A stretch of DNA of 63,590 nucleotides, filler included, from Octopus bimaculoides (Eukaryota): NCBI RefSeq assembly GCF_001194135.2. It is 6 parts of 6 records of this genome, joined end to end, with 100 filler letters (N's around TTAATTAATTAA, not from the genome) between each part and the next. Parts side by side here need not be neighbours in the genome. Positions count along the whole stretch, not along the records: positions 10,343 to 27,515 come from NC_069010.1; 5 more parts are not named here. One strand, 5' to 3'. The translations under genes were made by a program, and so were the position numbers. Numbering within the stretch: position 1 is the first letter of the stretch; each line of letters begins with the position of its first letter. The notes beneath the pieces were generated by a model that did no database searches, was not told the origin of the DNA, and saw only the letters and a program-made list of their open reading frames with translations. Shown here piece after piece: positions 8,110-26,753 of this stretch.

Positions 8110-10076
<1,967 letters not shown>

Positions 10077-10205
10077 TATATATTGTATTTATGCATGTGT
10101 GCATATGGGTACATACTCATATCTGCACGAGTGTATTTGTAGGTATATATTCATATGTGTACATGTGTGTATTTGTATCTACACGCAAGTGCATGTGTAT
10201 GTGTG

Positions 10206-10242
<37 letters not shown>

Positions 10243-10342
10243 NNNNNNNNNNNNNNNNNNNNNNNNNNNNNNNNNNNNNNNNNNNNTTAATTAATTAANN
10301 NNNNNNNNNNNNNNNNNNNNNNNNNNNNNNNNNNNNNNNNNN
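10243..10342. other. Artificial scaffold join: 44 N + TTAATTAATTAA + 44 N
   Basis: Identical 100-bp construct at five places; the linker has stops in all six frames. Confidence 0.95.
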
Positions 10343-10732
10343 TATATGTATATATATATACACACACACGTGCATATATATATAGATAGATATAGATATA
10401 CATCCATATAGATTTACTTTTGTTTGTGTGCTTTGTAACAATTTTTCTGTTTTTGTTGTTTATATTTTTCAATTTTTCTTCATCTACATATGTATGTGTG
10501 TATATATATATATATGAATGCATATACATGTATGTATATATATGCATATGCATGTGCGTACAAACACACCCACACATGCAGATACATATATATGTATATT
10601 TATATATATATATGTGTGTGTGTTATTTCTATGTATGTATGTTATTTTTTATCTGTTTTTTTTTGTTTGAATGTTTTATTATTTTGTTTGTTTGTTTTAA
10701 TTTTGCTTGTTTTTGGTTTTGTTTTTTTTCAT

Positions 10733-10849
10733 TCACACCTGCTCAGCTTTTCCTCCGCTCCCTCCATTTATGCGGGTGTTTGTCTTCTTGGATTTACCTG
10801 TTTTTTTCCGTCTCTTCTCAGGTACGGGAGTCAACAAGTATTTGAAGCG
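10733..10849 (-). CDS. DAT: DAT alternative terminal exon B: RFKYLLTPVPEKRRKKTGKSKKTNTRINGGSGGKAEQV*
   Basis: Acceptor ccttcattttcctcatttttgtag, phase 0 matching the 15308 exon, paralogous to exon A, TGA at 10735-10733, AATAAA on the minus strand at 10680-10675. Confidence 0.75.
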   Translation of the reverse strand, partial: RFKYLLTPVPEKRRKKTGKSKKTNTRINGGSGGKAEQV

Positions 10850-10873
10850 CTACAAAAATGAGGAAAATGAAGG

Positions 10874-10957
10874 TTATATGCGGCTGTTTGTAATCTTCGA
10901 TTTACCAGTCTTCTTTCTTCGTTTCCATGGCACCGGGGTGGTTAGATACGTCAGACG
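10874..10957 (-). CDS. DAT: DAT alternative terminal exon A: RLTYLTTPVPWKRRKKTGKSKITNSRI*
   Basis: Acceptor ctccttctctcctttctag, phase 0. RL..LTTP matches the post-TM12 segment of invertebrate DATs (Drosophila ..RFTILTTPW..). TAA at 10876-10874. Confidence 0.8.
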   Translation of the reverse strand, partial: RLTYLTTPVPWKRRKKTGKSKITNSRI

Positions 10958-10959
10958 CT

Positions 10960-11528
10960 AGAAAGGAGAGAAGGAGGAGAAGGGAGAGAGAGAGAGAGAG
11001 AGAGCGCGGGACGGAGAGGGAGGGAAAGAGGAAAAAAAAAAAGAAGACAACAAAAATGATGGTTACAATAGGGTTCGTAATATTGGAATTTTGTGGAAGA
11101 AGGAGGCAAAGGAGAAGGAGGAGAAGGAAGAGAAGATGATGATGATGATGATGAAGTATAGGAAGATAATGATGACGACGGCGACAACAACAACGACGAC
11201 GAAGAAGAAGAAGAATCGGAAAAAGAAGAAGAAGAAGCAGACGCGGAAAAAGAAGAAGAAGTGGAAGAAGAAGCGGAAGAAGAAGAAGAAGAAGAAGAAG
11301 AAGAAGCAGAAGTGGAAAAAGAAGAAGAAGAAGTGGAAGAAGAAGCGGAAGAAGAAGAAGAAGAAGAAGAAGAAGCAGAAGAAGAAGAAGTAGAAGAGGA
11401 AGAAGAAGAAGAAGAAGAAGAAGAAGAAGAGGAAGAGGAAGAAGAAGAAAAAGAAGAAGAAGAAGATGAAGAAGAAGATGAAGAAGAAAAGATGTTGATG
11501 ACAATGAACAAGAATGTTAGAGAAATAT
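10960..11528 (-). promoter_or_regulatory. 569-nt AG-free, pyrimidine-rich (TTC)n intron tract with a candidate distant branch point CTAAC (11520-11516)
   Basis: No CT dinucleotide on the + strand between 10960 and 11528; interrupted (GAA)n at about 11090-11500. Confidence 0.45.
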
Positions 11529-12118
11529 CTAGAATCTATTAAGTTATATTGTACAAAGCAGTAGTTACAAACTCCCCTAAACATAATATTATATAACATA
11601 AACTGTTATTAAAAATATATATATATATAAAAGACCAGCAAATTGTTTCGACTTAATACAAAGACATTTGAAGGGTCATAATACAAAGACATTTGAATTA
11701 ATTTTTACAATCCAGCCGTCCTTTCATACGGAATTTCATCTATCTTTAAACTATGACCCTGAGATGACTTATATATAAGGGAACTCTTATTATGTATATA
11801 TATCAGAAAATGTATATTAAGACAAAACAATTTGTTGGCCTAGTATGATTTTTTAAATAATTGTTGATGTTATATATTATGTTATATTATATTCATAGTG
11901 TATTATGTAATATTTGTAATATAAATAAATTATTGGATTGTCAATAGTATCTCTTAATTTAATTTATCTTTGTAATTGCATTATACCCATATTTATATGA
12001 TATTCAACTGACGTACCAGTGAATTGGATGTTTAACACGCCCCTTTGAAGGTTCTCTTTTCCTCAGTTTGTTACTTTATCTATATATATGCATATGTATG
12101 TCTATCTATCTATCTACA

Positions 12119-12149
<31 letters not shown>

Positions 12150-12153
<4 letters not shown>

Positions 12154-12310
12154 TCGTTTAACGTCCGCCCTCCATGCTAGCATGGGTTGGACGATTTGAC
12201 TAAGGACTGGTGTACCAGATGGCTACACCAGGCTCCAATCTGATTTGGCAGAGTTTCTACAGCTGGATGCCCTTCCTAACGCCAACCCCTCCGAGAATGT
12301 AGTGGGCGCT
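12150..12310 (-). mobile_element. Family A retroelement copy
   Basis: atcatcgtttaacgtccgccctccatgctagcatgggttgg...cccttcctaacgccaac. Confidence 0.8.
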
Positions 12311-13405
12311 AGTCTAGTTTTATATTTTTCAATGTTTCTTTTTTTCTCTCAATTTTTTTGAATGTGTTTCTTGCTGTTTGAAATAACACAATTCCTATTT
12401 CTCTCATCAAAGTTTCTAGACCTTCACAGTCTCGTTTTCATCTTCACTGATGAGATATTATTACCAGCATGTTTTGTTGTCACTTCACAATAGGCAAAGC
12501 CAATGTGATTGATTCAGACATAAACACTAGGATTTTAGGAGATGAGGAATTATTTACATTTTTTTTACATTTCATTATATTACATTTATATTATAAAGAA
12601 CCTCCAAAAACTAGACACTAACATCTAAACATTGTTCACTCTTAATTAGGTCACCTATGAAGAAAGCCAAACGATACCAAAATAAGCAACACCCATAAAA
12701 TGTGAATCTAAAAACACTTTCCACTTTAAAAAGAATGAAGGGCAACTCAGAATAATGGGACTAAGAAACAAGAAATTCGATGCTGAGTACAAAAGTGTAC
12801 TCCCATCATCAGCTGCCAAACGGATATCACAATGGTTTTGACACCTAGGCAGTACCATTCAATCTGGCAGTGTTGACAGCATTAAAATTATAATTGCTGC
12901 CTGGGAATCCACCAGCTTATTATTACAATGAAGGATGTGAAAGAAAACAAATAGTAATAATTTACAGCAACAAATCGTATGTATGTATGAATTATAGATG
13001 CATGTCATGTATATCGTATAGACGGTATCATAGTGAGAGAGAGAGAGAGAGAGAAAGAGAAAGAATGAAAGAACAAAATGCAAAAATATGAATTGATAAT
13101 GAAGAAAGGGAGGCAGCAGGGAGGTGGGTGGGTGTGCAAATCTTGTATTGCTGAGAAACGGCGTTCCGGAAGATGCAATTGCGTGCTCGTGTGCACATCT
13201 CGTCATGTGTAGCTGAAGCCAAACGGTGGATTACACACATGGAAAACAACAGCAATAACAACAACAGGCATTACAAATAAATGAATAAATAAACAAATAA
13301 ATGAATAAATAAATAAATAAATAATTAAATAAATAAATGACTGACATAAGCAAAATGATTAAATAAAACAATATGTATATGTATGTATATATTTATGTAT
13401 ATATA

Positions 13406-13485
<80 letters not shown>

Positions 13486-13812
13486 TATATATATATATGT
13501 ATGTATGTGTGCATGATGTATGTATTTTTATTTTTGTGTGTGCATATGTACATATATGTGTGTGTGTGTGTGTGTGTGCCATATTTGATGTCATATAGGA
13601 CATACTGGTTTTTCTCCACCAAAATGTCTCAAAAATATCACCCTGGGTTCTATATGCAATGTTGGGCCAATGTTACATGGTTTTATGCATTCAAAGTATT
13701 TTTCTCTGAATGTATGCTGCTGAAATTGGGACATGTCTGATGCGCCCATGCATTTTTCAAGCCATCAAATATACTATGTATGTATGTATCTATGTATGTA
13801 TGTATGTATGTA

Positions 13813-13985
13813 CAGGGGTTGGACAAAATAATGGAAACACCTAGCATCATAGCATCATAATTTTCAACTATCTATAAAACTGTCAAAAGCTTGTTTATTT
13901 TTATGTTTTTTGTATTTATTATTAGTGTTGCTTAATATGTTTTGCTAAAATTGCTGTTTCTTTTCAGATATCATCGAAACACTTC
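13813..13985. mobile_element. Solo Tc1-like terminal fragment
   Basis: TA|caggggttggacaaaataatggaaacacc is a typical Tc1 TIR start; no partner end seen. Confidence 0.45.
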
Positions 13986-13989
13986 ATTT

Positions 13990-15200
13990 AAAGTTGCTCC
14001 AGCAGCAGCAACACTAATGCCGATAATAGCAACATTAGCAACGGTAGTGAAAGTATGAGCACCAACAGTAGCACTATTGTTAGCACTATTGTTAGCAACA
14101 GTAACTGGGAGCAAAATGACAACAGCAACAGTTGTTGCTATTTTGTTGACTGAGCAGCAACGGCAGAGGCATAATAAATACTGGCACACATAGCAACATA
14201 GCAACGACAATAAAACAGTAATAGCCACATTAGCAGTAGCAACAGGGGAGTCATTACAAACACCCAATACGAAGAAAGTAGCAACAACAAAATGACTGAG
14301 AAACATCAACTTCTGGAAAGAGAATTTGGCACAATCATGCAGAAACTGAAACAGTTGGAGAAGATTGACATTACAATTAACGAAGCAACGGTGGTGGAAT
14401 TAGCAACGTGTACTAAAATAGCAATAATACAACCAGTAGCAGTGGTGGATAGCAACAGTGGAGACATTATCAATGCAAAATGTCAACAAAGCAGTAACAG
14501 CACCTTTGACAACAACAACAGTAAAAGAGCGAGGTATTATCAACATTAGCACAAACAAAATAGCAACATAAAAAGTAGCAATAGTGGAGACGTTATGAAT
14601 ATCAACTTAAATGGCAACAGAAATACTAGCAACAAAAACAGTGGTAACATTATTAACTCTAACATTAACAAAATAGGAATGTCGATAACAACAAGAACAC
14701 CAACAGTAGCAACACCAATAGCAACAATGGAGACAGTTGCAACACCAATAGCAACACAGACATGGGTAAAAGAACAACAAAAGCAACAAGATCAAGAAAA
14801 TTGCAACAGCAACACTGAGGAAACAGTAACGATAACATTGAGAAAATAGCAACAGCAAATATTAAGAAATTAGCAACATCAACAACAATTACATGAAAAG
14901 AGCAATATCAAGGATATAGCAACATCAATGGCAATGCATACAAAGAATAGCAACATTAATACTGAGAAAGCAGCAGCACCAAGGAAATAGCAACAATGAA
15001 GGGGGGAAAATAGCAACATCATTTGTAACGTTGATGAAAATAGCACCGTAAAAGGATCGAGAATATAGCAACAGCATGATCGAACAAAAGTAATGCGGCA
15101 GGGGTGGAAAGAAAAGCATTATCAACGTTATCAGCAAGAAATAGCAACAACATCAATGAGACAACACTGAGAAAGTAGAGAAGCAATAGAGAATTTAAAT
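13990..15200. repeat. Degenerate (AGCAAC/AAC)n low-complexity tract
   Basis: Pervasive agcaaca/atagca motifs. Confidence 0.8.
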
Positions 15201-15307
15201 ATAAAAAAAAACAAAAAAAACAACAGTAACAATCAAAGAAAAAATTTTATGGCCAGCTGTAGCTTGCTTGTGGTTAGTTAGGTGTGCGGTTGCAAATATT
15301 GTCTTAC

Positions 15308-15475
15308 CTCTTTAGCTGTCCCGGGTGTGGTGACCAGACCAAATATAGCGAATCCTGGAATACAGAGGATAGAGGAGAGAGCAACGCACCAACCAATCAG
15401 ATTAGCCGCCCAAGGGTACTCATAGTCGTCGTATTTTAGGGGTTGGTAAGCAACCAGACCGAATATTATGTTGAA
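15308..15475 (-). CDS. DAT: DAT exon (168 nt, TM11-TM12): FNIIFGLVAYQPLKYDDYEYPWAANLIGWCVALSSILCIPGFAIFGLVTTPGTAKE
   Basis: ccttccag acceptor, GTAAG donor, SLC6 YEPL.Y..Y.YP.WAN..GW pattern. Confidence 0.95.
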
Positions 15476-15559
15476 CTGGAAGGAGAGGAGAAATTGTAAA
15501 TATGAAATAAAAAGGGATGATCGGATGGGGGTGGTTTAAAGATGATGGGGGGTAATGGC

Positions 15560-15995
15560 GGATGGGAGGTGGTGAAGGGTGGATTTAATGATGGTGGGGG
15601 GAATGGCGAGTGAACCTTCATCGTTTTCACTCGACGATGATGATGGTGGCATTGACAACAATGATGATGATGATGATGATGATGGTGATGATGCTGGTGA
15701 TCATGATGAACATGATGATGATGATGGCAGTGATGATGACCATGATGATTATGACGATGACGATGATGACAATATCATCATCATTGATCAAGATGAAAAT
15801 GATGATGACAATAATGGTGATGGTGATGATGACGATGACAATCATAATGATGACAGTGATGAGAATGATGATGATGATGACGATGGTTATGATGATGATG
15901 ATGGTCATAATGATGATGGCGATGAGAATGATGATGACAATGACGATGATGATGATAGTGGTGGTGGTGATGATGATGATGATGATGATGATGAC
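15560..15995. repeat. Interrupted (GAT)n trinucleotide tract
   Basis: Direct inspection; source of the spurious poly-D/M/H ORFs. Confidence 0.95.
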
Positions 15996-15999
15996 TTAC

Positions 16000-16100
16000 C
16001 ATTAAGAATACAGGTGCTACGAATTTCCAGCAGACCCGCCAGTAGAAACCGGGGCGGAATCCCATCATAGATTCAATATCGTCAGAGAACTTGTCCACGC
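16000..16100 (-). CDS. DAT: DAT exon (101 nt): (G)[33 protein letters not shown]
   Basis: ctttcag acceptor, GTAAGT donor, SLC6 F..DI..M.G..PG.YW..CW motif. Confidence 0.97.
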
Positions 16101-16299
16101 CTGAAAGAACGAAGAATGACCGGCGTCGTGAGTGGTCAGCATGACGTCAGGAGGACAAGGAGGGTAGTGGTGAGCGGGGCAGAGGGAGTGGTGGATGCAT
16201 GCCCTTGGTTTGGTGGCGGATATGTAAGAAGAGAGGTGGATGCCATTGACGTGGTGGGCATGGGGAGGTTGTTGTCGGTGAAGCGAGCATGAAGTATAC

Positions 16300-16760
16300 A
16301 GCAGGTATGGGATAGGTGGAGAGTGGTGGTGGTGGTGGTGGTGGTGATGGTGGTGGTGGTGGCAGTGGTGATTGGGGTAGTGGTAATGGTGGTGTTCTGG
16401 TTGTAGTGGTGATGGTAGTGGTGGTTGTGGTGGTGGTAGCAGTGGTGATTGGGGTAGTGGTAATGGTGGTGTTCTGGTTGTAGTGGTGGTAGTGGTGGTA
16501 GTGGTGGTGGTGGTTTTGGTGGTGGCGGCGGGGGCGGCAATGGCGGTGGTGGTTGTGGTGGTGGTGGCAGTGGTGATGGTGGTGTTCTGGTTGTAGTGGT
16601 AGTGGTGGTGGCGGCGGTGGTGGTAGTGATTGTGGTGGCGACTGGAGTGTTGGTGGGGGTGGTGTTCCGGTTGTAGTGGTGGTAGTGGTGGTGGTGATGG
16701 TGGTGGTGGTTGTAGTTGTGGTGGTGATGGTGGTGTTCTGCTTGTGGTAGTGGTGTATGA
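16300..16760. repeat. (GGT/GTA)n trinucleotide tract
   Basis: Direct inspection. Confidence 0.95.
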
Positions 16761-17300
16761 TTCATTACACTTACCATTCTCTACATTCAACACCTATACA
16801 CTTACCATTCAAACACTTACTACCCCCTACATTTACCATCCCCTACACTTACAATTCCCTACATTTACCACTACCTACTCTTAACATCCCTTACACTTAC
16901 AATTCCTACACTTACCATTCATTACACTTACCATCCTCTACACTTAACACTTCTACACTTACCATTCCCATACTTACCCTTCCTACACTCACCCCCTTTA
17001 CACTTACCACTTTTACACTCAGTTCCTACACTTACAGTTCACTACACTTACAACCCCTTACACTTACAATTCCTACACTTACTATTCCTACACTTACTAT
17101 TCCTACACTTACCCCCTATATTTCCTGTCCCTCTACACTTGCAATTCCTTCACTATCATTCATTACTCTTACCATCCCCTACACTTACCATTCTCTACAT
17201 TAACTATCCCCTACACTTACCATTCCCCTAAATTTACTGCCCCCCTACACTTACAATTCCTTACACTTACCATTTATTACACTTACTGTTCTGTACACTT
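16760..17300. repeat. Degenerate minisatellite of about 16-17 bp (cttaccattccctaca)
   Basis: About 30 degenerate copies of acacttac(c/a)attcc. Confidence 0.85.
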
Positions 17301-17302
17301 AC

Positions 17303-17402
17303 CGTAACAATAAGAAATTGTTATACTTTCAAAAAAGACAGCAAATAAAATAGAATAACCGGCGGCATATCTATCCATCAGATGAACCACATATGCTCCT
17401 CC
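17303..17402 (-). CDS. DAT: DAT exon (100 nt, TM10): [33 protein letters not shown](G)
   Basis: cattccag acceptor, GTAAGT donor; [10 protein letters not shown] is shared with Drosophila DAT. Confidence 0.97.
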
Positions 17403-17554
17403 CTGGAATGACGTGGAATAGAAAAATAGCAGAATATAAGAATACAAGAATATGAGAATATAAGAATATAAATGTATGGTAACATCTTGACACGACTATG
17501 ATGGTTCTACCGACCTACTGCTTGAATAGGATAAAACCCCCTTCGGTCATGAAT

Positions 17555-17935
17555 GATGGTCATAATGATGATGATGATGATAATCCTTTCTACTGGAAGC
17601 ACAAGGCCTCAAATTTGGGGGAAGGGATTAAGTCGATTTACATTGATCCCCAGTGCGTAACTGGTACTAATTTTATTGACCCTGAAAGGTCGAAAGGCAC
17701 AGTCGACCTTGGCATGATTTAAATATAATAATAATGATGATGATGATGGTGATAATGATCCTTTCTACTATAGGGCACAAGGCCTGAAATTTGGTGGGAC
17801 GGGACTAGTCGATTTAATTGACCCCAGTGTTTCACTGGTACTGGTACAGAATTGAAACTCAGAACGTAGCAGCAGATGGAATACTGCTAAACATTTTACC
17901 AGGCATGTTAACAATTCTACCAGCTTGCCGCCTTA
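17555..17935 (-). mobile_element. Two tandem copies of tRNA-derived SINE family C
   Basis: aatcctttctact...acaaggcct.aaattt...gtcgattt...ccccagtg...ctggtact..., repeated twice. Confidence 0.75.
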
Positions 17936-17937
17936 TC

Positions 17938-17973
<36 letters not shown>

Positions 17974-17976
<3 letters not shown>

Positions 17977-18530
17977 GCTCTAATGCAGTACCAGGCAGTG
18001 GCTGTCATGGCTTCTGATCTTAACTGATTGCAAGTGTTATCATGTACATTGTTTTGTCTTGGTATAAAAGATGGGCTACAGAAAATATTCTGCTTAATAC
18101 CACAGATTTGTTTCTCAGTTGTTTGACCTTAACCAGTTGAGCATGTCCCTTGGTGGCTGATGATATGTGCATCTCTGATCATGAGCAGAAGTAGTGGGGG
18201 AGCATCATAGCCATGTGTTGAGAGGAATTCTTTGGGGTTTGGATAATTTACCTTTGGAAACATGGATTTTTGTTCAACATCCTTAAACAACCTTTATTCA
18301 GGGCTCTTTTGAGTGGGATGGGCTACTCTACCTGAAGAAAATTCTAACTGGGCCTCACCTGCAAGGTCATGCACTGTTTATCTTGATATGAGATCACCAT
18401 GTCGCGCACATATGGTTGTGATGCATGTGCCTGGTGTACCCTTATCAGACGGGTAGTCATGATGGGTATACTGGACTTCGTATATTTTACCCCAGTGTTA
18501 CTTTGATGGCATGCACTGCTCTCTCACTCA
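17974..18530. mobile_element. Non-coding interspersed element of about 560 bp embedded in a (TAA)n array
   Basis: Complex sequence flanked on both sides by (TAA)n; partial second copy at about 19010-19100. Confidence 0.55.
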
Positions 18531-18580
18531 ATAATAATAAGAAGAAGAAGAACAACAATAATAATAATAATGTACTGTAC

Positions 18581-18709
18581 CTGAGCACAACTAGCTAATC
18601 CAACTACAAAGTATACGGTAAACAACATCGCCACGAATAATTCTCGATGTCTTCGTAACCATGGAAACTCATCTGCTAAAGCTGTCAGGATAGCTTCTGA
18701 GCCACCAAA
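18581..18709 (-). CDS. DAT: DAT exon (129 nt, TM8 end to TM9): [43 protein letters not shown]
   Basis: ttgaacag acceptor, GTACAG donor; FGGSEAI.TAL.DEFP is DAT-like. Confidence 0.97.
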
Positions 18710-19239
18710 CTGTTCAAGGGAGATAACAGAGAGAGAAAAGATATCAATACAGAGAAATACAATAATATCTTTTGGTTATAATTCTTTACAATAGAGGGGC
18801 TATAGGAATTGTGTATTATGTTTATATATCAGATAAAACAGAATCCATGGAGATTGGTGGTAGTGGTCTACAGTGGCAAGGCTTGTGTTATCTGGAAAAA
18901 GCCAGGAAAAATTCTGCGAAATTACTGTAGGGAGTGGTGTATCCAACGTTTCTGAAATGTCTTGTCAACTTTACCCTTTTTTTATTTCCTGCCTATCAAC
19001 TTTCCCATAGTGGCTGACAATATGTGCATTTCTGATCATGAACAGGAGTAATGGCGGAGCATCACAGCCATGTGTTGAGAGGAATTCTTTGGGATTTGAA
19101 TAAACGTAACAAAGGCAAAGTTTGAAGGAATTATTAGCCATTTTTCAAACTTTCTAGGGGTCAGAAAATATGAAATAACAGTTACTATCTGAGGACAAGA
19201 ATTGTGTTATACAGTGTAATTTATGCTCAGTACGTCAGG

Positions 19240-19960
19240 ATGTAGAAGTAAGGGTATCAAATGATCAAGGTAGACTTGGTAGAGGCAACAGGATTTGGGT
19301 AATCTAGGCTCATCTAGATGGAGATGTTAGGATAATGAGTAATCCAAGCTCAGTGCATCTGGCTAAAGATGTTAAGATGTGGGGCAATCTGAGCTCAATT
19401 GGTCTAGGTTTAGATGTGACGATGCTGGGTGATCTTCGCCCCAGAATATTGAGTAATCTAGGTTCAGTACCTCTTGGTGGGTATGTTTGACTGACAAATA
19501 ATTCAAGCTCACTACATCTGTGTGAAGCTATTAGGCTGCCTGGCAATCTAAGCTCAGTTGATATAGGTTTAGTTGTAACAATGTTAGTTGATCTAGACTC
19601 AATACATCTTAGTGGAGAAGTTAGTATGTTGGGTAATCTAGGCTCTGTATGTCTGTGTGAAGATGTTAGAATGTTGGATGATTTAAGCTCAGTTAGTCAA
19701 AGTTTAACTATAAGGATGCTGGTTGATCTAGACTCAGTGCATCTTAATGGAGATGTTAGGATATTGGGTAGTCTTGGATCAATATGTCTACATGGAGATG
19801 TCAGGATATCAGATGAACCAGACTTAAATAGATCTTGATGTAGAGGTTAGGATGATGAATGCTGCAGGTTCAGTAAATCTTGGTGGAGGTGTTAGGCTAT
19901 CATTTGGCTTATAACCATTTCATCTGGGTGGAGATTTTGGAGAGTAAATATCACAGGTTT
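19240..19960. repeat. Diverged 45-bp minisatellite (about 15 units) with partial 135-bp higher-order period
   Basis: Unit about ggtaatctaggctcagtacatcttggtggagatgttaggatgttg; starts at 19632 and 19677 are 45 apart; aagctcagtt at 19549 and 19684 are 135 apart. Confidence 0.85.
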
Positions 19961-19976
19961 CAAACCTTGTACTTAC

Positions 19977-20089
19977 CGAACTGTCTAGACCTAGGGTAAG
20001 CAACATGAGGAAGAATATCAATGCCCAAAATGTTGCACCTGGGAGTGTAGCTATAGCTTCTGGATATACAACGAACACTAAACCAGGAC
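19977..20089 (-). CDS. DAT: DAT exon (113 nt, EL4-TM8): (G)[37 protein letters not shown]
   Basis: ttttgcag acceptor, GTAAGT donor; GPGL.F.VYP and LGLDS (Na2 site) motifs. Confidence 0.97.
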
Positions 20090-20139
20090 CTGCAAAAGAT
20101 ACAACAGAGAGAGAGAGAAACAGAGTTAATATTTAATTA

Positions 20140-20385
20140 TTCATTTCAAATTTTGGCACAAGGGCCAGCAATTTTGGTGAGAGGGCTAAGTTGATTACAT
20201 TGACCTCCCCCACCCCACCCCACCCCAGTATTCAACTGGTACCTATTTTATCGATCCCCAAAATGATGAAAGGCAAAGTCAACTTCATCAGCGTTTGAAC
20301 TCAGAATATAAAGAGGGACAAAATGCTGGTAACCTTTTTGCTTGGCATGCTAATGATTCTGCCACCTTGCAGCCTTAATAACAAT
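20140..20385 (-). mobile_element. SINE family C copy
   Basis: ttttggcacaagggccagcaattt...gaaaggcaaagtcaac...tttgaactcagaa...ctgccacc. Confidence 0.75.
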
Positions 20386-20710
20386 AATAATAATAATAAT
20401 AATAATGATAATAATAATAATCGTAATAGTAATAATAATAATAATAATTTCAAGTTTTGGCACAAGGCTAGCAATTTTGATTAGGTCGCCCTCTGTGCTC
20501 AATTAGTTCAATGTAACCTCGTGTATATCGTTGGCGATTTTTTCTTCCTCCGTCTTCCCTTCTTTGGACTTTCCTATATTTCCGACAAAGAGCTCTGCTC
20601 GAAACGTCAAATTCTCTTTCTTTCCTTTCCTGAGCGGCCAGTAACACAATATCTGTATCACGTCCTCGCGTTGTTTTTTGTTGTTTTTTTGTCATTTTTC
20701 TTTTTTGAAC

Positions 20711-20742
<32 letters not shown>

Positions 20743-21287
20743 NNNNNNNNNNNNNNNNNNNNNNNNNNNNNNNNNNNNNNNNNNNNNNNNNNNNNNNNNN
20801 NNNNNNNNNNNNNNNNNNNNNNNNNNNNNNNNNNNNNNNNNNNNNNNNNNNNNNNNNNNNNNNNNNNNNNNNNNNNNNNNNNNNNNNNNNNNNNNNNNNN
20901 NNNNNNNNNNNNNNNNNNNNNNNNNNNNNNNNNNNNNNNNNNNNNNNNNNNNNNNNNNNNNNNNNNNNNNNNNNNNNNNNNNNNNNNNNNNNNNNNNNNN
21001 NNNNNNNNNNNNNNNNNNNNNNNNNNNNNNNNNNNNNNNNNNNNNNNNNNNNNNNNNNNNNNNNNNNNNNNNNNNNNNNNNNNNNNNNNNNNNNNNNNNN
21101 NNNNNNNNNNNNNNNNNNNNNNNNNNNNNNNNNNNNNNNNNNNNNNNNNNNNNNNNNNNNNNNNNNNNNNNNNNNNNNNNNNNNNNNNNNNNNNNNNNNN
21201 NNNNNNNNNNNNNNNNNNNNNNNNNNNNNNNNNNNNNNNNNNNNNNNNNNNNNNNNNNNNNNNNNNNNNNNNNNNNNNNNNNNNNNN

Positions 21288-21324
<37 letters not shown>

Positions 21325-21340
21325 TGCACACATGATGAGC

Positions 21341-21421
21341 TTCTTTCAGTTTCTGTCTACCAAATCGACTTACAAGACTTTGGTTGTCCCCAAGGCCATA
21401 GCAGAAGACACTTGCGCAAGG
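21341..21421 (-). mobile_element. SINE family B fragment, inverted relative to the 21936 copy
   Basis: ttctttcagtttctgtctaccaaatc...agaagacacttgcgcaagg. Confidence 0.75.
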
Positions 21422-21678
21422 TATGAAACCTCCTAGAAGTAAGACAATCAGTTGAAAAGTAACCTCCCCAGCAAGGGATATGGTGGGAGTATGTGTGTGT
21501 TTGATGTAAGTTGAGTGACATGTTGTGTGGTGATGTTGGCAGCGGCGGCGGTGGTGGTGCAGTATTTGGGTTAAAGCATGTTGTGGAGTAGTGGTGGTAT
21601 TGGTGGTGAGGACAAGTCGTGTGGTGTTGCCTTCGCCACGCACCTTACTGGTATGTGGACTGGAGGTGTCCTACCTAC

Positions 21679-21803
21679 CTTGTGTAGCCACCTCTGAAAT
21701 GGGTAGATTTGAGTGTTGTGACATATAGCCCAAAATCATGAAGATAACAAAGCCAGAGAAAAAACTGGTCATACAGTTAACAATACTGGTTAGTATGGCG
21801 TCT
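21679..21803 (-). CDS. DAT: DAT exon (125 nt, TM7): (R)[41 protein letters not shown](G)
   Basis: cctttcag-type acceptor (ctttcag), GTAGGT donor; DA..TS..N..TSF..GFVIF..LGYM motif. Confidence 0.97.
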
Positions 21804-21935
21804 CTGAAAGAAGGAAAGAGAAATGGATAAATAAGTAGATAAATAAACAGACAGACAGGTAAATAGAGAAAGAAAGCGGGATAGAAAGATAGATAAAAAG
21901 AGAGACAAATAGATATTTTTAAAACAGTCTTATAT

Positions 21936-22120
21936 AGGCACAGGAGTGGCTGTGTGGTAAGAAGCTTGCTTCCCAACCACATGGTTCCAAGTTCAGTCCC
22001 ACTGTGTGACACCTTGGGCAAATGTCTTCTACTATAGTCTTGGGCCAACCAAAGCCTTGTTAGTAGATTTGGTAGACGGAAACTGAAAGAGGCTCACCAT
22101 ATATGTGTATGTATATATGA
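21936..22120 (+). mobile_element. SINE family B 5' part
   Basis: aggcacaggagtggctgtgtggtaagaagcttgct...ggttccaagttcagtccc (A/B-box-like head). Confidence 0.8.
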
Positions 22121-22579
22121 GGCGTTTAGTTAACAGACCGTTGTAAGTGCCATAACTTAAAAACCAAGAAAAACACAACATTTCATGACTTTCAGAATGC
22201 AATACCATGGTAAGAAATGAAGTTAGGAAGCTGGTTTTGGTCTTAAAATGACCGTGAAGACCTCCTCTAATCATTCCACCTATGTAAAATTATTTATTTA
22301 TGTATGCATCTGAAAGATGAAACAATGACTGCGTTTTTCTCATTTTGTAGAATATACCAGTAATACGAAACGGTGTATCGTATATTTTCGCCATAATACC
22401 CAGAAAAATCATACAGACACCACCCCACAAAGGTATTGTTTGTGTTTTAATATACCAAGGTAAGTATCTTTAAGAGGTAAGTAAGACAAGATAGTAAGAT
22501 AATAACCCATTATCGTTATGATGGTAATGAGGAATATTAGAAGATGAGCCATAGCATCTCGAGTTCGAAATTTCCCCAA

Positions 22580-22625
22580 GACACCTGAAGAAGGCTGGAG
22601 GGTATATCAGCTGAAACGTTGTGTT
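22580..22625 (+). ncRNA. Minimal type-I hammerhead ribozyme motif in a Penelope pLTR-like fragment (22570-22715)
   Basis: Stem I GACAC/GTGTT, core CTGAAGA plus an extra A, stem II GGCTG/CAGCT, GAAA, palindromic ACGT stem III, GUU cleavage triplet. Confidence 0.55.
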
Positions 22626-22748
22626 AACAACAAACAAGATGAGGACAAATATCGGTTGAATGTAAATAATGTAAATAATGCACGTGAATTCCTCAGCTCT
22701 TAAATATAGAATTGTATTATGTAAGGAAAAATAGGTTGTCTTACTTAC

Positions 22749-22852
22749 CGATAAACATTATTATGAATATCATTATAACTTGCAAATGCCAATAAAACAC
22801 CAAATCCTGGGCCGAGAGAGAAGAAGACTTGTGTGGCAGCATCCACCCATAC
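22749..22852 (-). CDS. DAT: DAT exon (104 nt, TM6): [34 protein letters not shown](R)
   Basis: acaacag acceptor, GTAAGT donor; nearly identical to Drosophila DAT TM6 ([27 protein letters not shown]). Confidence 0.97.
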
Positions 22853-22924
22853 CTGTTGTTTACAGAGAGAAAGAAAGGAAAATAGAAGATAGAGAGGAAC
22901 ATGGAAACAAAAGTTTAATATATC

Positions 22925-23405
22925 TTGGTTTCAAATTTTGGCACAAGGCCAGCAATTTCATGGGAAAGGGTAGGTTGACTAAATCAGCCCAAGTGCTCAA
23001 CTGGTACTTATTTTATCGACCCCCAAAAGGGTAAAAGGCAAAGTTGGCTCTGGCAGTATTTGAACTCAAAACATAAAGATGGATGAAATGCTGCTAAGCA
23101 GTTTGTCCGGCATGCTAACGATTCTGCCAGCTCACTACCTTACTCTTTTACTTGTTTCGGTCATTTGACTGTGGCCATGCTGGAGCACCGCCTTTTAGTC
23201 GAGCAAATCGACCCCGGGACTTATTCTCTGTAAGCCTAGTACTTATTCTATCGGTATCTTTTGCTGGTACTTATTTAATCGACCCCGAAAGGATGAAAGG
23301 CAAAGTCTACCTCGGCGGAATTCGAACACAGAATAATAGCAGCGGATGAAATACCGCTAAGCATTTCGCCTGGCATGCTAACGATTCTGCCAGCTTGCCC
23401 CCTTA
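22925..23405 (-). mobile_element. SINE C copy (22925-23140) followed by a chimeric C-head/B-tail SINE (23140-23405)
   Basis: The family C head joins the family B 3' half at about 23264, in the shared gtacttatt/ggggtcgat core. Confidence 0.65.
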
Positions 23406-23739
23406 CCAGGAATAAATATTAGTTCCATATTTAGTGCTGACTTAAAAGGTAGAAAGTAAGTTTATTGAATTCATCGTATCTGATTGTTTTCTATCGGAAT
23501 TATTTACTGCTCTTCATAGAAACATTACAATAACAACAACTTTTTTGCAAAAGTCTTCCATCTTACAACTGCATCATGGGAAAAGAAAGTTGCAAAATAC
23601 TTCAGTTTTTTTTTTTAAAGAAAAAGTAGACATTTTTTCTGCATGGAGGACAAAAAGAAAAAAAACTATATGAAAAATATACAGTTGTATAAAAAATATT
23701 CTTCTAAAAAGTATTGTTATATGATTTACTAACTGGATT

Positions 23740-24699: not shown

Positions 24700-24850
24700 C
24701 GTCCCTGTAACTTAGCGGTTCAGCAAAAGAGACCGATAGAATAAGTACTAGGCTTACAAAGAATAAGCTCTGGGGTCGATTTGGTCGACTATAAAGGCGG
24801 TGCTCCTGCATGGCCGCAGTCAAATGACTGAAACAAGTAAAAGAGTAAAA
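24700..24850 (+). mobile_element. SINE family B 3' half
   Basis: gtaacttagcggttcagcaaaagagaccgatagaataagtac...gaaacaagtaaaagagtaaaa. Confidence 0.8.
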
Positions 24851-25191: not shown

Positions 25192-26343
25192 CGGGGTGTT
25201 TCAAAGAATTTGATATCATTTGAGATGTAAATATCACAGAAACTACAGAGTCAAAGCAAATGAAACTAAACAGGCTTAATGTTGAGCAACAGAAGATTTG
25301 TAGTAAAGATTGCTTGCCAACATAACATGGCAGTCCTGGTTTAGGAGTAATGTTGCTGTAATTTAGCCCCAGGAGACATCGTCTCTAGCTGGTTATATGA
25401 CATGGTCTGTGTCCTTATATTTTTGATATAAGATAGTATCGTTTAGCCAGCTGGAGACAATGTCTCCTGGGGCTAAATTACAGCAACATTAGTCTTAAAC
25501 CAGGACTGCCATGTTATGTTGGCAAACAATCTTTACTACAAAGTACTGTTGCTGAATATCTCACGTTGTAAGGTTTAAAAATAGTAATTTTCTAACATAA
25601 GATTTATTCCTCCAAATTTGAATGAGAAATTCAAAGCTATGTGGATTCCATGAACAATTTCACAAATGTTCAATATGCACACCACCTGAGACAAGTCAGT
25701 AGTCCAGCTCCTCCCAAACATGCTGCAGCATGTCTTGGGTAACAGTCTCCAGTGCGGTAGTGATTCTCTGTTCAAGTTCCTCTAGGTTTGCAGGAAGAGG
25801 TGGGGACATAGACCAGGCCCTTCACATAGCTCCGTGTTTGCACTTTCACTTGTCATCTGCTGTTATGGCCTAAATGGGCTGCAGCTTGGGGGGTTTCATT
25901 AGCAAGCATTTCCTCAGGAGATGCCAAACTGTCGTTGGAGGAATTTGGGTTTCCAGACTTCGCATGAGTTTTTGGCGAACCCACTTAACCATTTCTTCTG
26001 ATGTTAGTGGTCATCCAGATCCTTTTGTCCTGCACAGAGAGCATTTCCTCTTTGAACTTTTTGTGCCATGTTCAAATCTGCATCGCCATTGGTAACTTTT
26101 TAGAGAACTCTCTCATGCACATTGCACAGTCTTGTTCGACCGTGTTCGAGCATACTCCAACACAAAATGACTTTTCTCTTCCAGTGAATGCCATTTCTAT
26201 ACTAGAAAAGATAAACATATCAAGCATTAAACATAAAATTTTGACCTGTTTCTACACATGCTGTTAAAATTTGAAGTCATTTGAACAAGAACTGGCAAAG
26301 TTATTAGATTGTGAAATGATATCAAATTTTTTGAAACACCCAG
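25192..26343 (-). mobile_element. Internally deleted IS630-Tc1-mariner element with TIRs
   Basis: TA|cggggtgtttcaaagaatttgatatcatt ... aatgatatcaaattttttgaaacacccag|TA; minus-strand transposase remnants (FCVGVCSNT.. N-terminal HTH region; GGVHIEHL* C-terminus). Confidence 0.7.
25297..25542. repeat. Foldback MITE-like hairpin: 96-nt arms with 5 mismatches, 54-nt loop
   Basis: 25297-25392 is the reverse complement of 25447-25542. Confidence 0.9.
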
Positions 26344-26360
26344 TATATATATTGGAAACA

Positions 26361-26753
26361 TGGAGGTGCAATGGCCCAGTGGTTAGGGCAGCAGACTCGC
26401 AGTCGTAGGATTGCGGCTTCGATTCCCAGACTGGGTATTGTGAGTGTTTATTGAGCGAAAACACCTAAAGTTCCACAAGGCTCCGGCAGGGGATGGTGGC
26501 GAACCCTGCTCTACTCTTTCACCACAACTTACCCTCAGTCTTACTTCCTGTTTCTGTTGTAACCTGTATTTCAAAGGGTCAGCCTTGTCATACTCTGTGT
26601 CACACTGAATCGCCCCGAGAACTACGTTAAGGGTACATGTGTCTGTGGAGTGCTCAGCCACTTTCACGTTAATTTCACGAGCAGGCTGTTCTGCTGATCG
26701 GATCAACTGGAACCATCATCGTTGTAACCGACGGAGTGCCAACCACCACCACA
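26361..26753 (+). mobile_element. Full-length tRNA(Arg)-like SINE family D with a 14-bp TSD
   Basis: Head ggcccagtggttagggcagcagactcgcag...ggcttcgattccc; TSD atatattggaaaca at 26347-26360 and 26754-26767. Confidence 0.85.

What the first reader, a model, noticed from the sequence alone, without database searches (positions are those of the whole stretch)
10733..10957. Tandemly duplicated terminal exon gives DAT two alternative C-termini with different PDZ-type ligands
Seen: two paralogous phase-0 exons 108 nt apart, each behind its own pyrimidine tract and AG. Exon A is RLTYLTTPVPWKRRKKTGKSKITNSRI* and exon B is RFKYLLTPVPEKRRKKTGKSKKTNTRINGGSGGKAEQV*. They share 21 of 27 residues, yet 14 of those 21 codons differ synonymously. 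That pattern indicates an old duplication with protein-level purifying selection on both copies. Only 24 nt separate stop A from acceptor B, so the choice is an alternative 3' splice site with a shared 3' UTR. Established: monoamine-transporter C-termini bind PDZ proteins (human DAT -LKV binds PICK1) and control trafficking. Inference: A ends in a class I-type motif (S-R-I) and B in a class III-type motif (E-Q-V). This would be a splice switch of scaffold partners that keeps the polybasic KRRKKTGKSK segment.
Basis: partly seen in the sequence, partly recalled or inferred. Interest (0 to 1): 0.85.

Follow-up and report, generated by a model that had tools for sequence, protein, structure and literature searches.

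The report
Duplicated last exon in cephalopod DAT
A cephalopod dopamine-transporter gene carries two tandem, diverged copies of the start of its last coding exon, each with its own splice acceptor. Their codons show both have been kept as protein-coding, so the gene very probably makes two tails: the conserved one and a shorter one that lacks the conserved end.

Summary
On the minus strand, two phase-0 coding segments start 108 nt apart (A 10957-10874, B 10849-10733). Each lies behind a pyrimidine tract and a TAG acceptor, downstream of the TM12 exon of an SLC6 transporter. That transporter is closest to Drosophila DAT and to cuttlefish SLC6A3.

A and B share 21 of 27 residues, and 14 of those 21 use different codons. 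Nearly all synonymous sites differ, against about 15% of non-synonymous sites (p = 4e-9). No neutral simulation reproduced this, so both copies have been under protein-level selection. That makes alternative 3' splice-site use likely, but no transcript data could be reached.

New here:
- B is the ancestral tail. It keeps the ...R-x-NGG...x-Val end; 102 of 115 protostome DAT homologues end in Val.
- Three bivalve-type loci have a single B-type exon.
- A is a truncation just before NGG.
- Its stop codon supplies the likely branch point for B.
- Synonymous divergence is at least at the window-cuttlefish level, so the duplication is old.

The "PDZ class switch" is only a formal motif match. A better description is "with versus without the conserved Val terminus". 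Verdict: real, ordinary in kind, moderately interesting.

The parts
15308..15475 (-). Penultimate coding exon (TM12). It encodes FNIIFGLV...TTPGTAKE. The donor is AAAGAG|gtaaga in phase 0 and is shared by both tails.
   Evidence: The same exon boundary is present in the Mizuhopecten locus; the homologous exons of L001, L002 and Sepia L004 align to the same end. 89% amino-acid identity to the cuttlefish exon.
10958..15307 (-). Last intron when acceptor A is used (4,350 nt). When acceptor B is used the intron extends to 10850.
   Evidence: Splice-site inspection. No further tail-like exon lies inside it.
10960..11528 (-). AG-free zone of 569 nt, 87.5% pyrimidine, directly upstream of acceptor A. 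On the gene strand it contains (TTC)n at 11201-11492 and (CT)n at 10966-11004. The last 37 nt before the acceptor are 100% pyrimidine.
11062..11067 (-). Candidate branch point for acceptor A: TGTAAC, with the branch A at 11063, which is -106. The only other URAY core in the AG-free zone lies at -560.
   Evidence: Inference from consensus only.
10874..10957 (-). Tail exon A. Acceptor tag|CGT; 27 codons RLTYLTTPVPWKRRKKTGKSKITNSRI; stop TAA at 10876-10874. It is the derived, truncated copy and lacks the NGG...x-V end.
   Evidence: Comparison with orthologue tails.
10850..10873 (-). 24-nt spacer that serves as the polypyrimidine tract (86% pyrimidine) and TAG acceptor of exon B. Together with the stop codon of A it forms ATAAC, with the branch A at 10874, which is -25. 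No AG lies between that branch point and the acceptor.
10733..10849 (-). Tail exon B. 38 codons RFKYLLTPVPEKRRKKTGKSKKTNTRINGGSGGKAEQV; stop TGA at 10735-10733. It is the ancestral, canonical tail.
   Evidence: It shares the R[LF]xxLxxP...xR[LVMI]NGG...xV architecture with mollusc, brachiopod and annelid DAT homologues.
10675..10701 (-). Poly(A) signals ATTAAA (10701-10696) and AATAAA (10680-10675), 32 and 53 nt after stop B. None lies between stop A and acceptor B, so the 3' end is shared.

Best explanation
A 108-bp tandem duplication copied the 3' splice-site region and the first ~84 nt of the last coding exon of the cephalopod dopamine-transporter (DAT/SLC6A3-type) gene. The duplication is old: its synonymous divergence is at least as large as that between the window species and a cuttlefish.

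The donor of the TM12 exon (15308) can now join either of two acceptors.
- Acceptor A (10957) gives a 27-residue tail that stops at TAA. Exon B then becomes 3' UTR. Because that stop lies in the last exon, nonsense-mediated decay is not expected.
- Acceptor B (10849) gives the ancestral 38-residue tail ending ...RINGGSGGKAEQV.

Both tails keep three features:
- the proximal R-[L/F] plus Y-L-x-T-P segment, which in SLC6 carriers corresponds to the ER-export and C-terminal-latch region (established knowledge, not tested here);
- the lineage-specific polybasic KRRKKTGKSK stretch;
- its Thr and Ser.

Only B keeps the conserved NGG...x-Val terminus, the kind of end that binds PDZ scaffolds such as PICK1 in mammalian DAT. 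The switch therefore most likely produces a scaffold-competent transporter and a tail-truncated one, differing in trafficking or anchoring.

The choice is probably regulated at acceptor A. That acceptor sits behind an extreme CU-rich, AG-free tract with a distant branch point. B uses its own branch point, built from A's stop codon.

Shown: the sequence anatomy, the homology, the selection signature, and the polarity (B ancestral).
Inferred: that both junctions occur in mRNA, how they are regulated, and the functional consequence.
For: - Gene identity. Pfam SNF, E = 1.3e-131. Best solved-structure match is Drosophila DAT at 513 bits, ahead of hNET 424, hDAT 400 and hSERT 377. Best database proteins are mollusc 'sodium-dependent dopamine transporter-like' entries at 69-75% identity. 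The cuttlefish SLC6A3 locus has exon-level identity of 87-100%.
- Gene structure. All exon junctions are GT-AG and in frame with either tail.
- Selection signature. Sd 18.5 of 19.7 synonymous sites against Nd 9.5 of 61.3 non-synonymous sites, Fisher p = 4e-9. If A were neutral and B constrained at equal rates, the probability of the observed synonymous excess is 2e-8. In neutral simulations, 0 of 50,000 kept the protein.
- Age. 67% of residues conserved between A and B use different codons, against 60% between the window and cuttlefish orthologous exons.
- Polarity. Scallop, two bivalve-like contigs and all retrieved lophotrochozoan proteins have one tail exon of the B type. 102 of 115 homologues end in Val.
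- A keeps W11 and the L-T-T-P of the widespread protostome L-T-T-P-W motif, where B has changed. This argues against A being a decaying copy.
- Each acceptor has its own branch-point-like motif, pyrimidine tract and AG, with no intervening AG.
- Both alternative acceptors are TAG, whereas all 8 constitutive acceptors of the gene are CAG.
- C-terminal splice isoforms that alter expression and function are documented for the sister transporter NET (PMC2916826).
Against: - No transcript evidence of any kind was available.
- No second cephalopod tail locus could be examined. The cuttlefish locus ends 10 kb after the penultimate exon without reaching a tail exon.
- The selection signal rests on only 27 codons and comes entirely from codons 1-17. 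Codons 18-27 are almost identical at the nucleotide level and show no dN/dS contrast.
- None of the 115 longest annotated protostome DAT homologues has an A-like truncated end.
- The functional reading (PDZ or scaffold binding, trafficking) is extrapolated from mammalian DAT. Even there, surface targeting does not strictly need canonical PDZ binding (Bjerggaard 2004, as cited in PMC2916826).
Confidence: 0.65

Rival explanations
1. Only the canonical acceptor B is used. Copy A is an unused relic of the duplication that merely looks coding.
For: - B alone matches the tail architecture of all orthologues.
- No A-like tail is present among the database proteins.
- Codons 18-27 of A could have been refreshed by gene conversion from B.
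Against: - In codons 1-17 every one of the 13 conserved residues uses a different codon, while only 4 residues changed. An unused copy as old as this synonymous divergence (at least the window-cuttlefish level) would have lost its frame and residues. Neutral simulations gave 0 of 50,000, and the A-neutral model gives p = 2e-8.
- A keeps an intact acceptor with a perfect pyrimidine tract.
- An unused strong acceptor 108 nt upstream of the real one would be expected to be selected against, not preserved.
Confidence: 0.17
2. Both acceptors are used, but isoform A is a non-functional or regulatory by-product. For example, it could be a way of lowering the output of full-length DAT, with the protein tail itself irrelevant.
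For: - A removes the most conserved part of the tail.
- Dominant-negative or poorly trafficked C-terminal variants are known for NET (PMC2916826).
Against: A purely regulatory splice choice would not conserve the amino-acid sequence of A at synonymous saturation.
Confidence: 0.12
3. The duplicate is an assembly or haplotype artefact, or a chance resemblance.
For: The piece contains an assembly gap (20743-21287) and many microsatellites.
Against: - The copies are only 65% identical in nucleotides but 78% identical in protein, with different flanks. Collapsed haplotypes or a mis-joined duplicate would be nearly identical.
- The tblastn match of A to B has E = 6e-11 within the piece.
Confidence: 0.01

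Closest known systems
C-terminal splice variants of the noradrenaline transporter NET/SLC6A2 (human, rat, bovine)
   Same: - Same clade of SLC6 monoamine carriers.
- Alternative 3' exons replace the cytoplasmic tail after TM12.
- The variants differ in trafficking, stability and function (PMC2916826).
   Different: - From my own knowledge, not tested here: the NET variant tails are unrelated sequences from separate downstream exons, not homologous tandem copies.
- Here the two tails are paralogous and the choice is between two acceptors 108 nt apart within one terminal exon.
- For DAT itself that paper states no splice isoforms were known before its exon-6 variant.
Alternative exons derived from tandem exon duplication (mutually exclusive homologous exons)
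   Same: - Adjacent homologous exons of equal phase.
- Both are kept by purifying selection and give isoforms that differ in one homologous segment.
- Such events are described as rare, mostly ancient and functionally important (PMC9013439, PMC8373072, PMC9741552; abstracts seen).
   Different: - Classical cases are internal cassette pairs with a donor and an acceptor each.
- Here the duplicated unit is the start of the terminal exon. The upstream copy ends in its own stop codon, mutual exclusion follows automatically, and the downstream copy is carried as 3' UTR.
- No competing RNA structure was detected (z = -0.23).
PDZ-ligand C-terminus of mammalian DAT (-LKV, PICK1)
   Same: Exon B ends in x-x-Val like DAT homologues generally. 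PICK1 binding to monoamine-transporter tails is established (Torres 2001, cited in PMC2916826).
   Different: - No binding was tested.
- Position -2 is not conserved among protostome homologues.
- The -SRI of A is a by-product of truncation at a conserved internal x-R-[LVMI] motif.
GLT-1a / GLT-1b (EAAT2) C-terminal isoforms
   Different: It belongs to a different carrier family (SLC1), and the tails are not paralogous.

Membership tests
SLC6 / sodium:neurotransmitter symporter family (Pfam PF00209) | Significant match to the SNF profile across the TM5-TM12 region | tested here: met
   E = 1.3e-131, 440 bits, profile positions 205-522 of 524.
DAT-type monoamine transporter (DAT/NET clade) | Closest to characterised DATs rather than to SERT, GAT or GlyT | tested here: met
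   Drosophila DAT 513 bits, hNET 424, hDAT 400, hSERT 377, GAT1 352. Top database hits are named dopamine transporter, and Drosophila DAT is 67% identical. The nearest gene is cuttlefish 'SLC6A3'.
DAT-type monoamine transporter (DAT/NET clade) | TM1 aspartate and other substrate-site residues; dopamine uptake | not testable with these tools
   The exons for TM1-TM4 lie outside the piece. An octopamine-transporter-type specificity cannot be excluded by sequence rank alone.
Alternative exons derived from tandem exon duplication | Adjacent homologous exons of the same phase, each with its own splice signals | tested here: met
   108-nt period; 78% amino-acid and 65% nucleotide identity; both phase 0. 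Each has a branch-point-like motif, a pyrimidine tract and a TAG acceptor.
Alternative exons derived from tandem exon duplication | Both copies under purifying selection | tested here: met
   Sd/S = 18.5/19.7 against Nd/N = 9.5/61.3, p = 4e-9. Neutral simulations 0 of 50,000. The signal comes from codons 1-17 only.
Alternative exons derived from tandem exon duplication | Transcripts show mutually exclusive use of the copies | not testable with these tools
   No RNA-seq access. No cephalopod transcript covering the tail was found in the protein collection.
Alternative exons derived from tandem exon duplication | Both copies conserved in related species | tested here: inconclusive
   The cuttlefish locus L004 has no tail exon within the 10 kb available downstream. 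The outgroups (bivalve-type loci L001, L002, L003) have a single copy.
C-terminal PDZ ligands | Consensus at positions 0 and -2 (class I S/T-x-hydrophobic; class III D/E-x-hydrophobic) | tested here: met
   A ends S-R-I and B ends E-Q-V. This is a formal motif match only. By my rough estimate, roughly one random tail in six fits some PDZ class.
C-terminal PDZ ligands | Evolutionary conservation of the terminal residue, and actual PDZ binding | tested here: inconclusive
   Terminal Val occurs in 102 of 115 homologues, which supports B. The A-type end is seen in none. Binding is not testable here.

The most novel reading that the evidence does not exclude
Coleoid cephalopods have kept a built-in two-state switch in their dopamine transporter since before octopods and decapodiforms split. 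One acceptor yields the scaffold-competent tail ending in Val. The other yields a tail that retains the lineage-specific, phosphorylatable polybasic segment but drops the conserved terminus. The choice would be made per neuron class by CU-tract-binding (PTB-like) factors acting on the 569-nt AG-free tract, with A's stop codon doubling as B's branch point. The near-identity of codons 18-27, against complete synonymous turnover in codons 1-17, would then mark a nucleotide-level regulatory element shared by both copies rather than gene conversion.
Probability: 0.2. Interest if true: 0.55.

Novelty: new member of a known kind. Interest (0 to 1): 0.4.

Why it matters
DAT is the standard marker and the key clearance mechanism of dopaminergic neurons, including in the octopus optic lobe (PMC9815951). 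In mammals its C-terminus controls ER export, surface stability and scaffold binding. [quoted passage not shown]

A naturally evolved pair of DAT tails, with and without the conserved terminus and both preserved by selection, would be a ready-made comparison for asking what that terminus does in vivo. It would also be a clean example of tandem duplication of a terminal exon creating isoforms in the cephalopod nervous system. The kind of event (paralogous alternative exons, and C-terminal isoforms of SLC6 carriers) is already well known, so the value lies in the specific case rather than in a new principle.

Tried and rejected
- Cephalopod relatives of the tail. An 83-aa query (penultimate exon plus tail A) found only a bivalve-like ORF fragment. 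The 363-aa query returned many protostome DATs but no cephalopod in the top 120. A 150-aa C-terminal query found one fragmentary cuttlefish model. Its locus ends before any tail exon.
- Metagenome scan with an alignment of the penultimate exon. It found one bivalve-like contig with a single tail exon.
- Degenerate KRRKKTGKSK pattern in bacterial and archaeal genomes. It gave only three chance bacterial hits.
- Literature searches for the peptides and for cephalopod DAT splicing found nothing.
- RNA structure that might pick between the acceptors. The fold of 10720-11010 is no better than shuffles (z = -0.23), so a docking/selector mechanism is not supported.
- A third tail copy, or a more distal terminal exon, within the piece. 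None was found.
- Internal GGTAAAT 5'-splice-site-like motifs in both copies. Splicing from A's motif to acceptor B breaks the frame (checked by hand), so this was rejected as a cassette model.
- "Synonymous sites more different than saturation". This is partly a property of the Nei-Gojobori count, because orthologous window-cuttlefish exons also give pS of 0.66-0.97. The 13-of-13 run remains mildly unusual (p = 0.001-0.007).
- Transposase-like ORFs at 25560-26720 gave no Pfam match.
- The Rfam and tRNA scans of the piece were empty.
- The Pomacea locus was not on record.
- The exhaustive representative-protein search and structure prediction were not run. The tails are short and the collection had already been shown to lack cephalopod tails.

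Full report
**What is in the sequence**

The finding lies on the minus strand. Read in that direction, the piece carries the 3' two-thirds of an SLC6 transporter gene. There are eight canonical GT-AG exons:

| Exon | Minus-strand coordinates |
|---|---|
| TM5 | 25050-24916 |
| TM6 | 22852-22749 |
| TM7 | 21803-21679 |
| TM8 | 20089-19977 |
| TM9 | 18709-18581 |
| TM10 | 17402-17303 |
| TM11 | 16100-16000 |
| TM12 | 15475-15308 |

The TM12 exon ends ...ACAGCTAAAGAG|gtaaga in phase 0.
- Exon A follows ...cctttctag| at 10957. It encodes RLTYLTTPVPWKRRKKTGKSKITNSRI and stops at TAA (10876-10874).
- After a 24-nt spacer, ccttcattttcctcatttttgtag|, exon B starts at 10849. It encodes RFKYLLTPVPEKRRKKTGKSKKTNTRINGGSGGKAEQV and stops at TGA (10735-10733).

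There is no third copy in the piece.

**What gene it is**

- The partial protein matches Pfam SNF at E = 1.3e-131.
- Among solved structures it is closest to Drosophila DAT (513 bits). Human NET (424), human DAT (400), SERT (377) and GAT1 (352) follow.
- In the protein collection the best full-length matches are mollusc proteins named sodium-dependent dopamine transporter-like, at 69-75% identity.
- A shorter C-terminal query brought in a fragmentary model named SLC6A3 from the cuttlefish Acanthosepion pharaonis.
- The cuttlefish locus (L004) carries exons 87-100% identical in protein to those of the window. Over 276 codons the amino-acid identity is 94.9%.

Substrate specificity cannot be checked, because the exons for TM1-TM4 lie outside the piece.

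**Is the duplicate under selection?**

- A and B differ at 28 of 81 nucleotides. Seventeen of these are at third codon positions.
- By Nei-Gojobori counting, 18.5 of 19.7 synonymous sites differ, against 9.5 of 61.3 non-synonymous sites (Fisher p = 4e-9).
- When the same number of substitutions was placed at random, none of 50,000 trials kept 6 or fewer amino-acid changes without a stop. The mean was 16.5 changes.
- I also tested the specific null that A is an unused neutral copy while B is constrained, with equal mutation rates. The observed non-synonymous divergence then predicts about 29% synonymous difference. The observed excess has p = 2e-8.
- As a clock, 60% of conserved residues use different codons between the window and the cuttlefish orthologous exons. 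Between A and B the figure is 67%.

The duplication is therefore old, at least at the window-cuttlefish level of synonymous turnover. A has kept its reading frame, its residues and its acceptor throughout. This is the main evidence that A is translated. An assembly or haplotype artefact is excluded, because the copies are only 65% identical in DNA and have different flanks.

**An unexplained detail**

The divergence falls into two parts.
- In codons 1-17, all 13 conserved residues use different codons, and 24 of 51 nt differ.
- In codons 18-27 (GGTAAATCSAAGANNACAAACASCCGCATA), only 4 of 30 nt differ, and three of those four changes are non-synonymous (Fisher p = 0.003).

Either a short gene-conversion tract refreshed the 3' part, or that part carries a nucleotide-level element in both copies. 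I could not distinguish between these. The 13-of-13 run is itself mildly unusual (p = 0.001-0.007).

**Which copy is ancestral**

Tails of DAT homologues from the following groups all follow the pattern R-[LFIV]-x-x-L-x-x-P, then about 16 residues, then x-R-[LVMI]-N-G-G, then 4-6 residues, then x-V-stop:
- scallop, clams, oysters and mussels;
- four gastropods;
- Lingula;
- two annelids.

Exon B fits this pattern exactly (...T-R-I-N-G-G-SGGKAEQ-V). Of 115 near-full-length protostome homologues retrieved, 102 end in Val and 8 end in Leu.

Three outgroup loci have a single tail exon of the B type, with no second copy nearby:
- Mizuhopecten L003;
- an ENA contig with a bivalve-like tail, L001;
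- a JGI metagenome contig, L002.

B is therefore the ancestral terminal exon. A is the derived copy, cut off immediately before NGG. A's S-R-I is the counterpart of the conserved internal x-R-[LVMI] motif.

A also keeps Trp-11 and the L-T-T-P motif. These match the widespread protostome L-T-T-P-W motif where B has changed. That again fits a long-maintained copy rather than a decaying one.

The geometry suggests a 108-bp tandem duplication spanning -24 to +84 of the original exon. Even without the TAA, A's frame would have ended 8 codons later, at the TAG of B's acceptor (reading; inference).

**Splice-site anatomy**

- All eight constitutive acceptors of the gene are CAG. Both tail acceptors are TAG.
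- Acceptor A sits behind a 569-nt zone without a single AG. The zone is 87.5% pyrimidine and is made up of (TTC)n, (CT)n and CU-rich sequence. Only two URAY cores lie in it, at -106 (TTGTAAC) and -560. This implies a distant branch point.
- Acceptor B has its own compact unit. The stop codon of A plus the next base gives ATAAC, with the branch adenosine at -25. An 86% pyrimidine tract follows, with no AG before the acceptor. A's stop codon therefore probably doubles as B's branch point.
- The first poly(A) signals (ATTAAA at 10701-10696, AATAAA at 10680-10675) follow stop B, and none lies between A and B. An A-type mRNA would carry exon B as 3' UTR, and its stop would lie in the last exon.
- Folding of the region gives no structure better than shuffled controls (z = -0.23). 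I found no support for a competing-structure mechanism.
- A CU-tract-binding repressor acting on acceptor A is a reasonable but untested idea.

**Most likely function**

Both tails keep the following:
- the proximal R-L / R-F and Y-L-x-T-P segment, which from general knowledge of SLC6 carriers is the ER-export and C-terminal-latch region;
- the lineage-specific polybasic KRRKKTGKSK stretch, with its Thr and Ser in a basophilic-kinase context.

They differ in six residues and, above all, in the presence (B) or absence (A) of the conserved NGG...x-Val end.

In mammals the DAT and NET termini bind PICK1 and influence trafficking. Surface targeting of DAT, however, does not strictly require canonical PDZ binding. 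NET C-terminal splice variants differ in expression and function (PMC2916826).

The most economical reading is a switch between a transporter with the conserved scaffold- or trafficking-competent terminus and one without it. It is not supported by conservation, because position -2 varies freely among homologues, and it was not tested.

**What could not be done**

- No RNA-seq, Iso-Seq or EST resource was reachable, so use of both junctions remains inferred.
- The one cephalopod locus I could fetch ends 10 kb after the penultimate exon without a tail exon. Conservation of A and B in other cephalopods is therefore untested.
- Searches of papers found no description of cephalopod DAT isoforms or of these peptides.

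**Verdict**

The duplication-plus-selection inference stands and is now polarised: B is ancestral and A is a derived truncation. Alternative splicing is likely (about 0.65) but unproven. The PDZ-class story is over-interpreted.

In kind this is a new instance of two known phenomena: paralogous alternative exons from tandem duplication (PMC9013439, PMC8373072, PMC9741552) and C-terminal isoforms of SLC6 carriers. It has an unusual terminal-exon geometry. Interest is moderate.

Noticed in passing
window 10769-10957 (-): Divergence between the two tail copies falls into two parts. In codons 1-17 every conserved residue is re-coded (13 of 13). Codons 18-27 are 26 of 30 nt identical. This suggests either a gene-conversion patch or a shared nucleotide-level element.
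   Followed up: partly
window 10905-10911 and 10797-10803 (-): Both tail copies contain GGTAAAT, a good match to a 5' splice site (CTG|GTAAAT in A, CAG|GTAAAT in B), inside the T-G-K codons. Use of A's site with acceptor B would break the frame. The bivalve-like L001 tail also has GGTAAAT, at a different position (13036-13042).
   Followed up: partly
window 15661-15994: A (CAT)n microsatellite on the gene strand, about 110 units by Tandem Repeats Finder, begins a few bases after the donor of the TM11 exon. It stays open in frame with that exon (ORF 15781-16098). Intron retention would append a long His-rich run.
   Followed up: no
window 16065-17303: The intron between the TM10 and TM11 exons holds a G+C-rich block (up to 51%) with strong GC skew. 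It contains a 242-aa Pro/Thr/His-rich open frame on the gene strand. Next to it is a degenerate tandem array of about 110-nt period (16756-17303) that abuts the TM10 donor.
   Followed up: no
window 20743-21287: An assembly gap (545 N) flanked by (TA)n lies inside the TM7-TM8 intron. G+C falls to 14% in the profile there.
   Followed up: no
window 20144-20377, 22929-23143, 23264-23406; 23140-23266 with 24721-24848: Introns carry several copies of an interspersed repeat, 74-79% identical. A 92%-identical inverted pair lies about 1.45 kb apart within the TM5-TM6 intron and could form a long RNA duplex. No tRNA or Rfam match was found.
   Followed up: partly
L004 (Acanthosepion pharaonis, CAHIKZ030000446.1) 10001-23671: The deposited cuttlefish SLC6A3 model (P0134, 193 aa) is fragmentary. 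It omits the TM10 and TM11 exons, which are present in the locus at 17765-17869 and about 20620-20735. It also reads through the TM12 donor into the intron. The last intron there exceeds 10 kb, against 4.35 kb in the window.
   Followed up: partly
window 10960-11528 (-): A 569-nt stretch without any AG, 87.5% pyrimidine, lies upstream of acceptor A. It is unusually long and is largely built from the (TTC)n and (CT)n microsatellites.
   Followed up: partly
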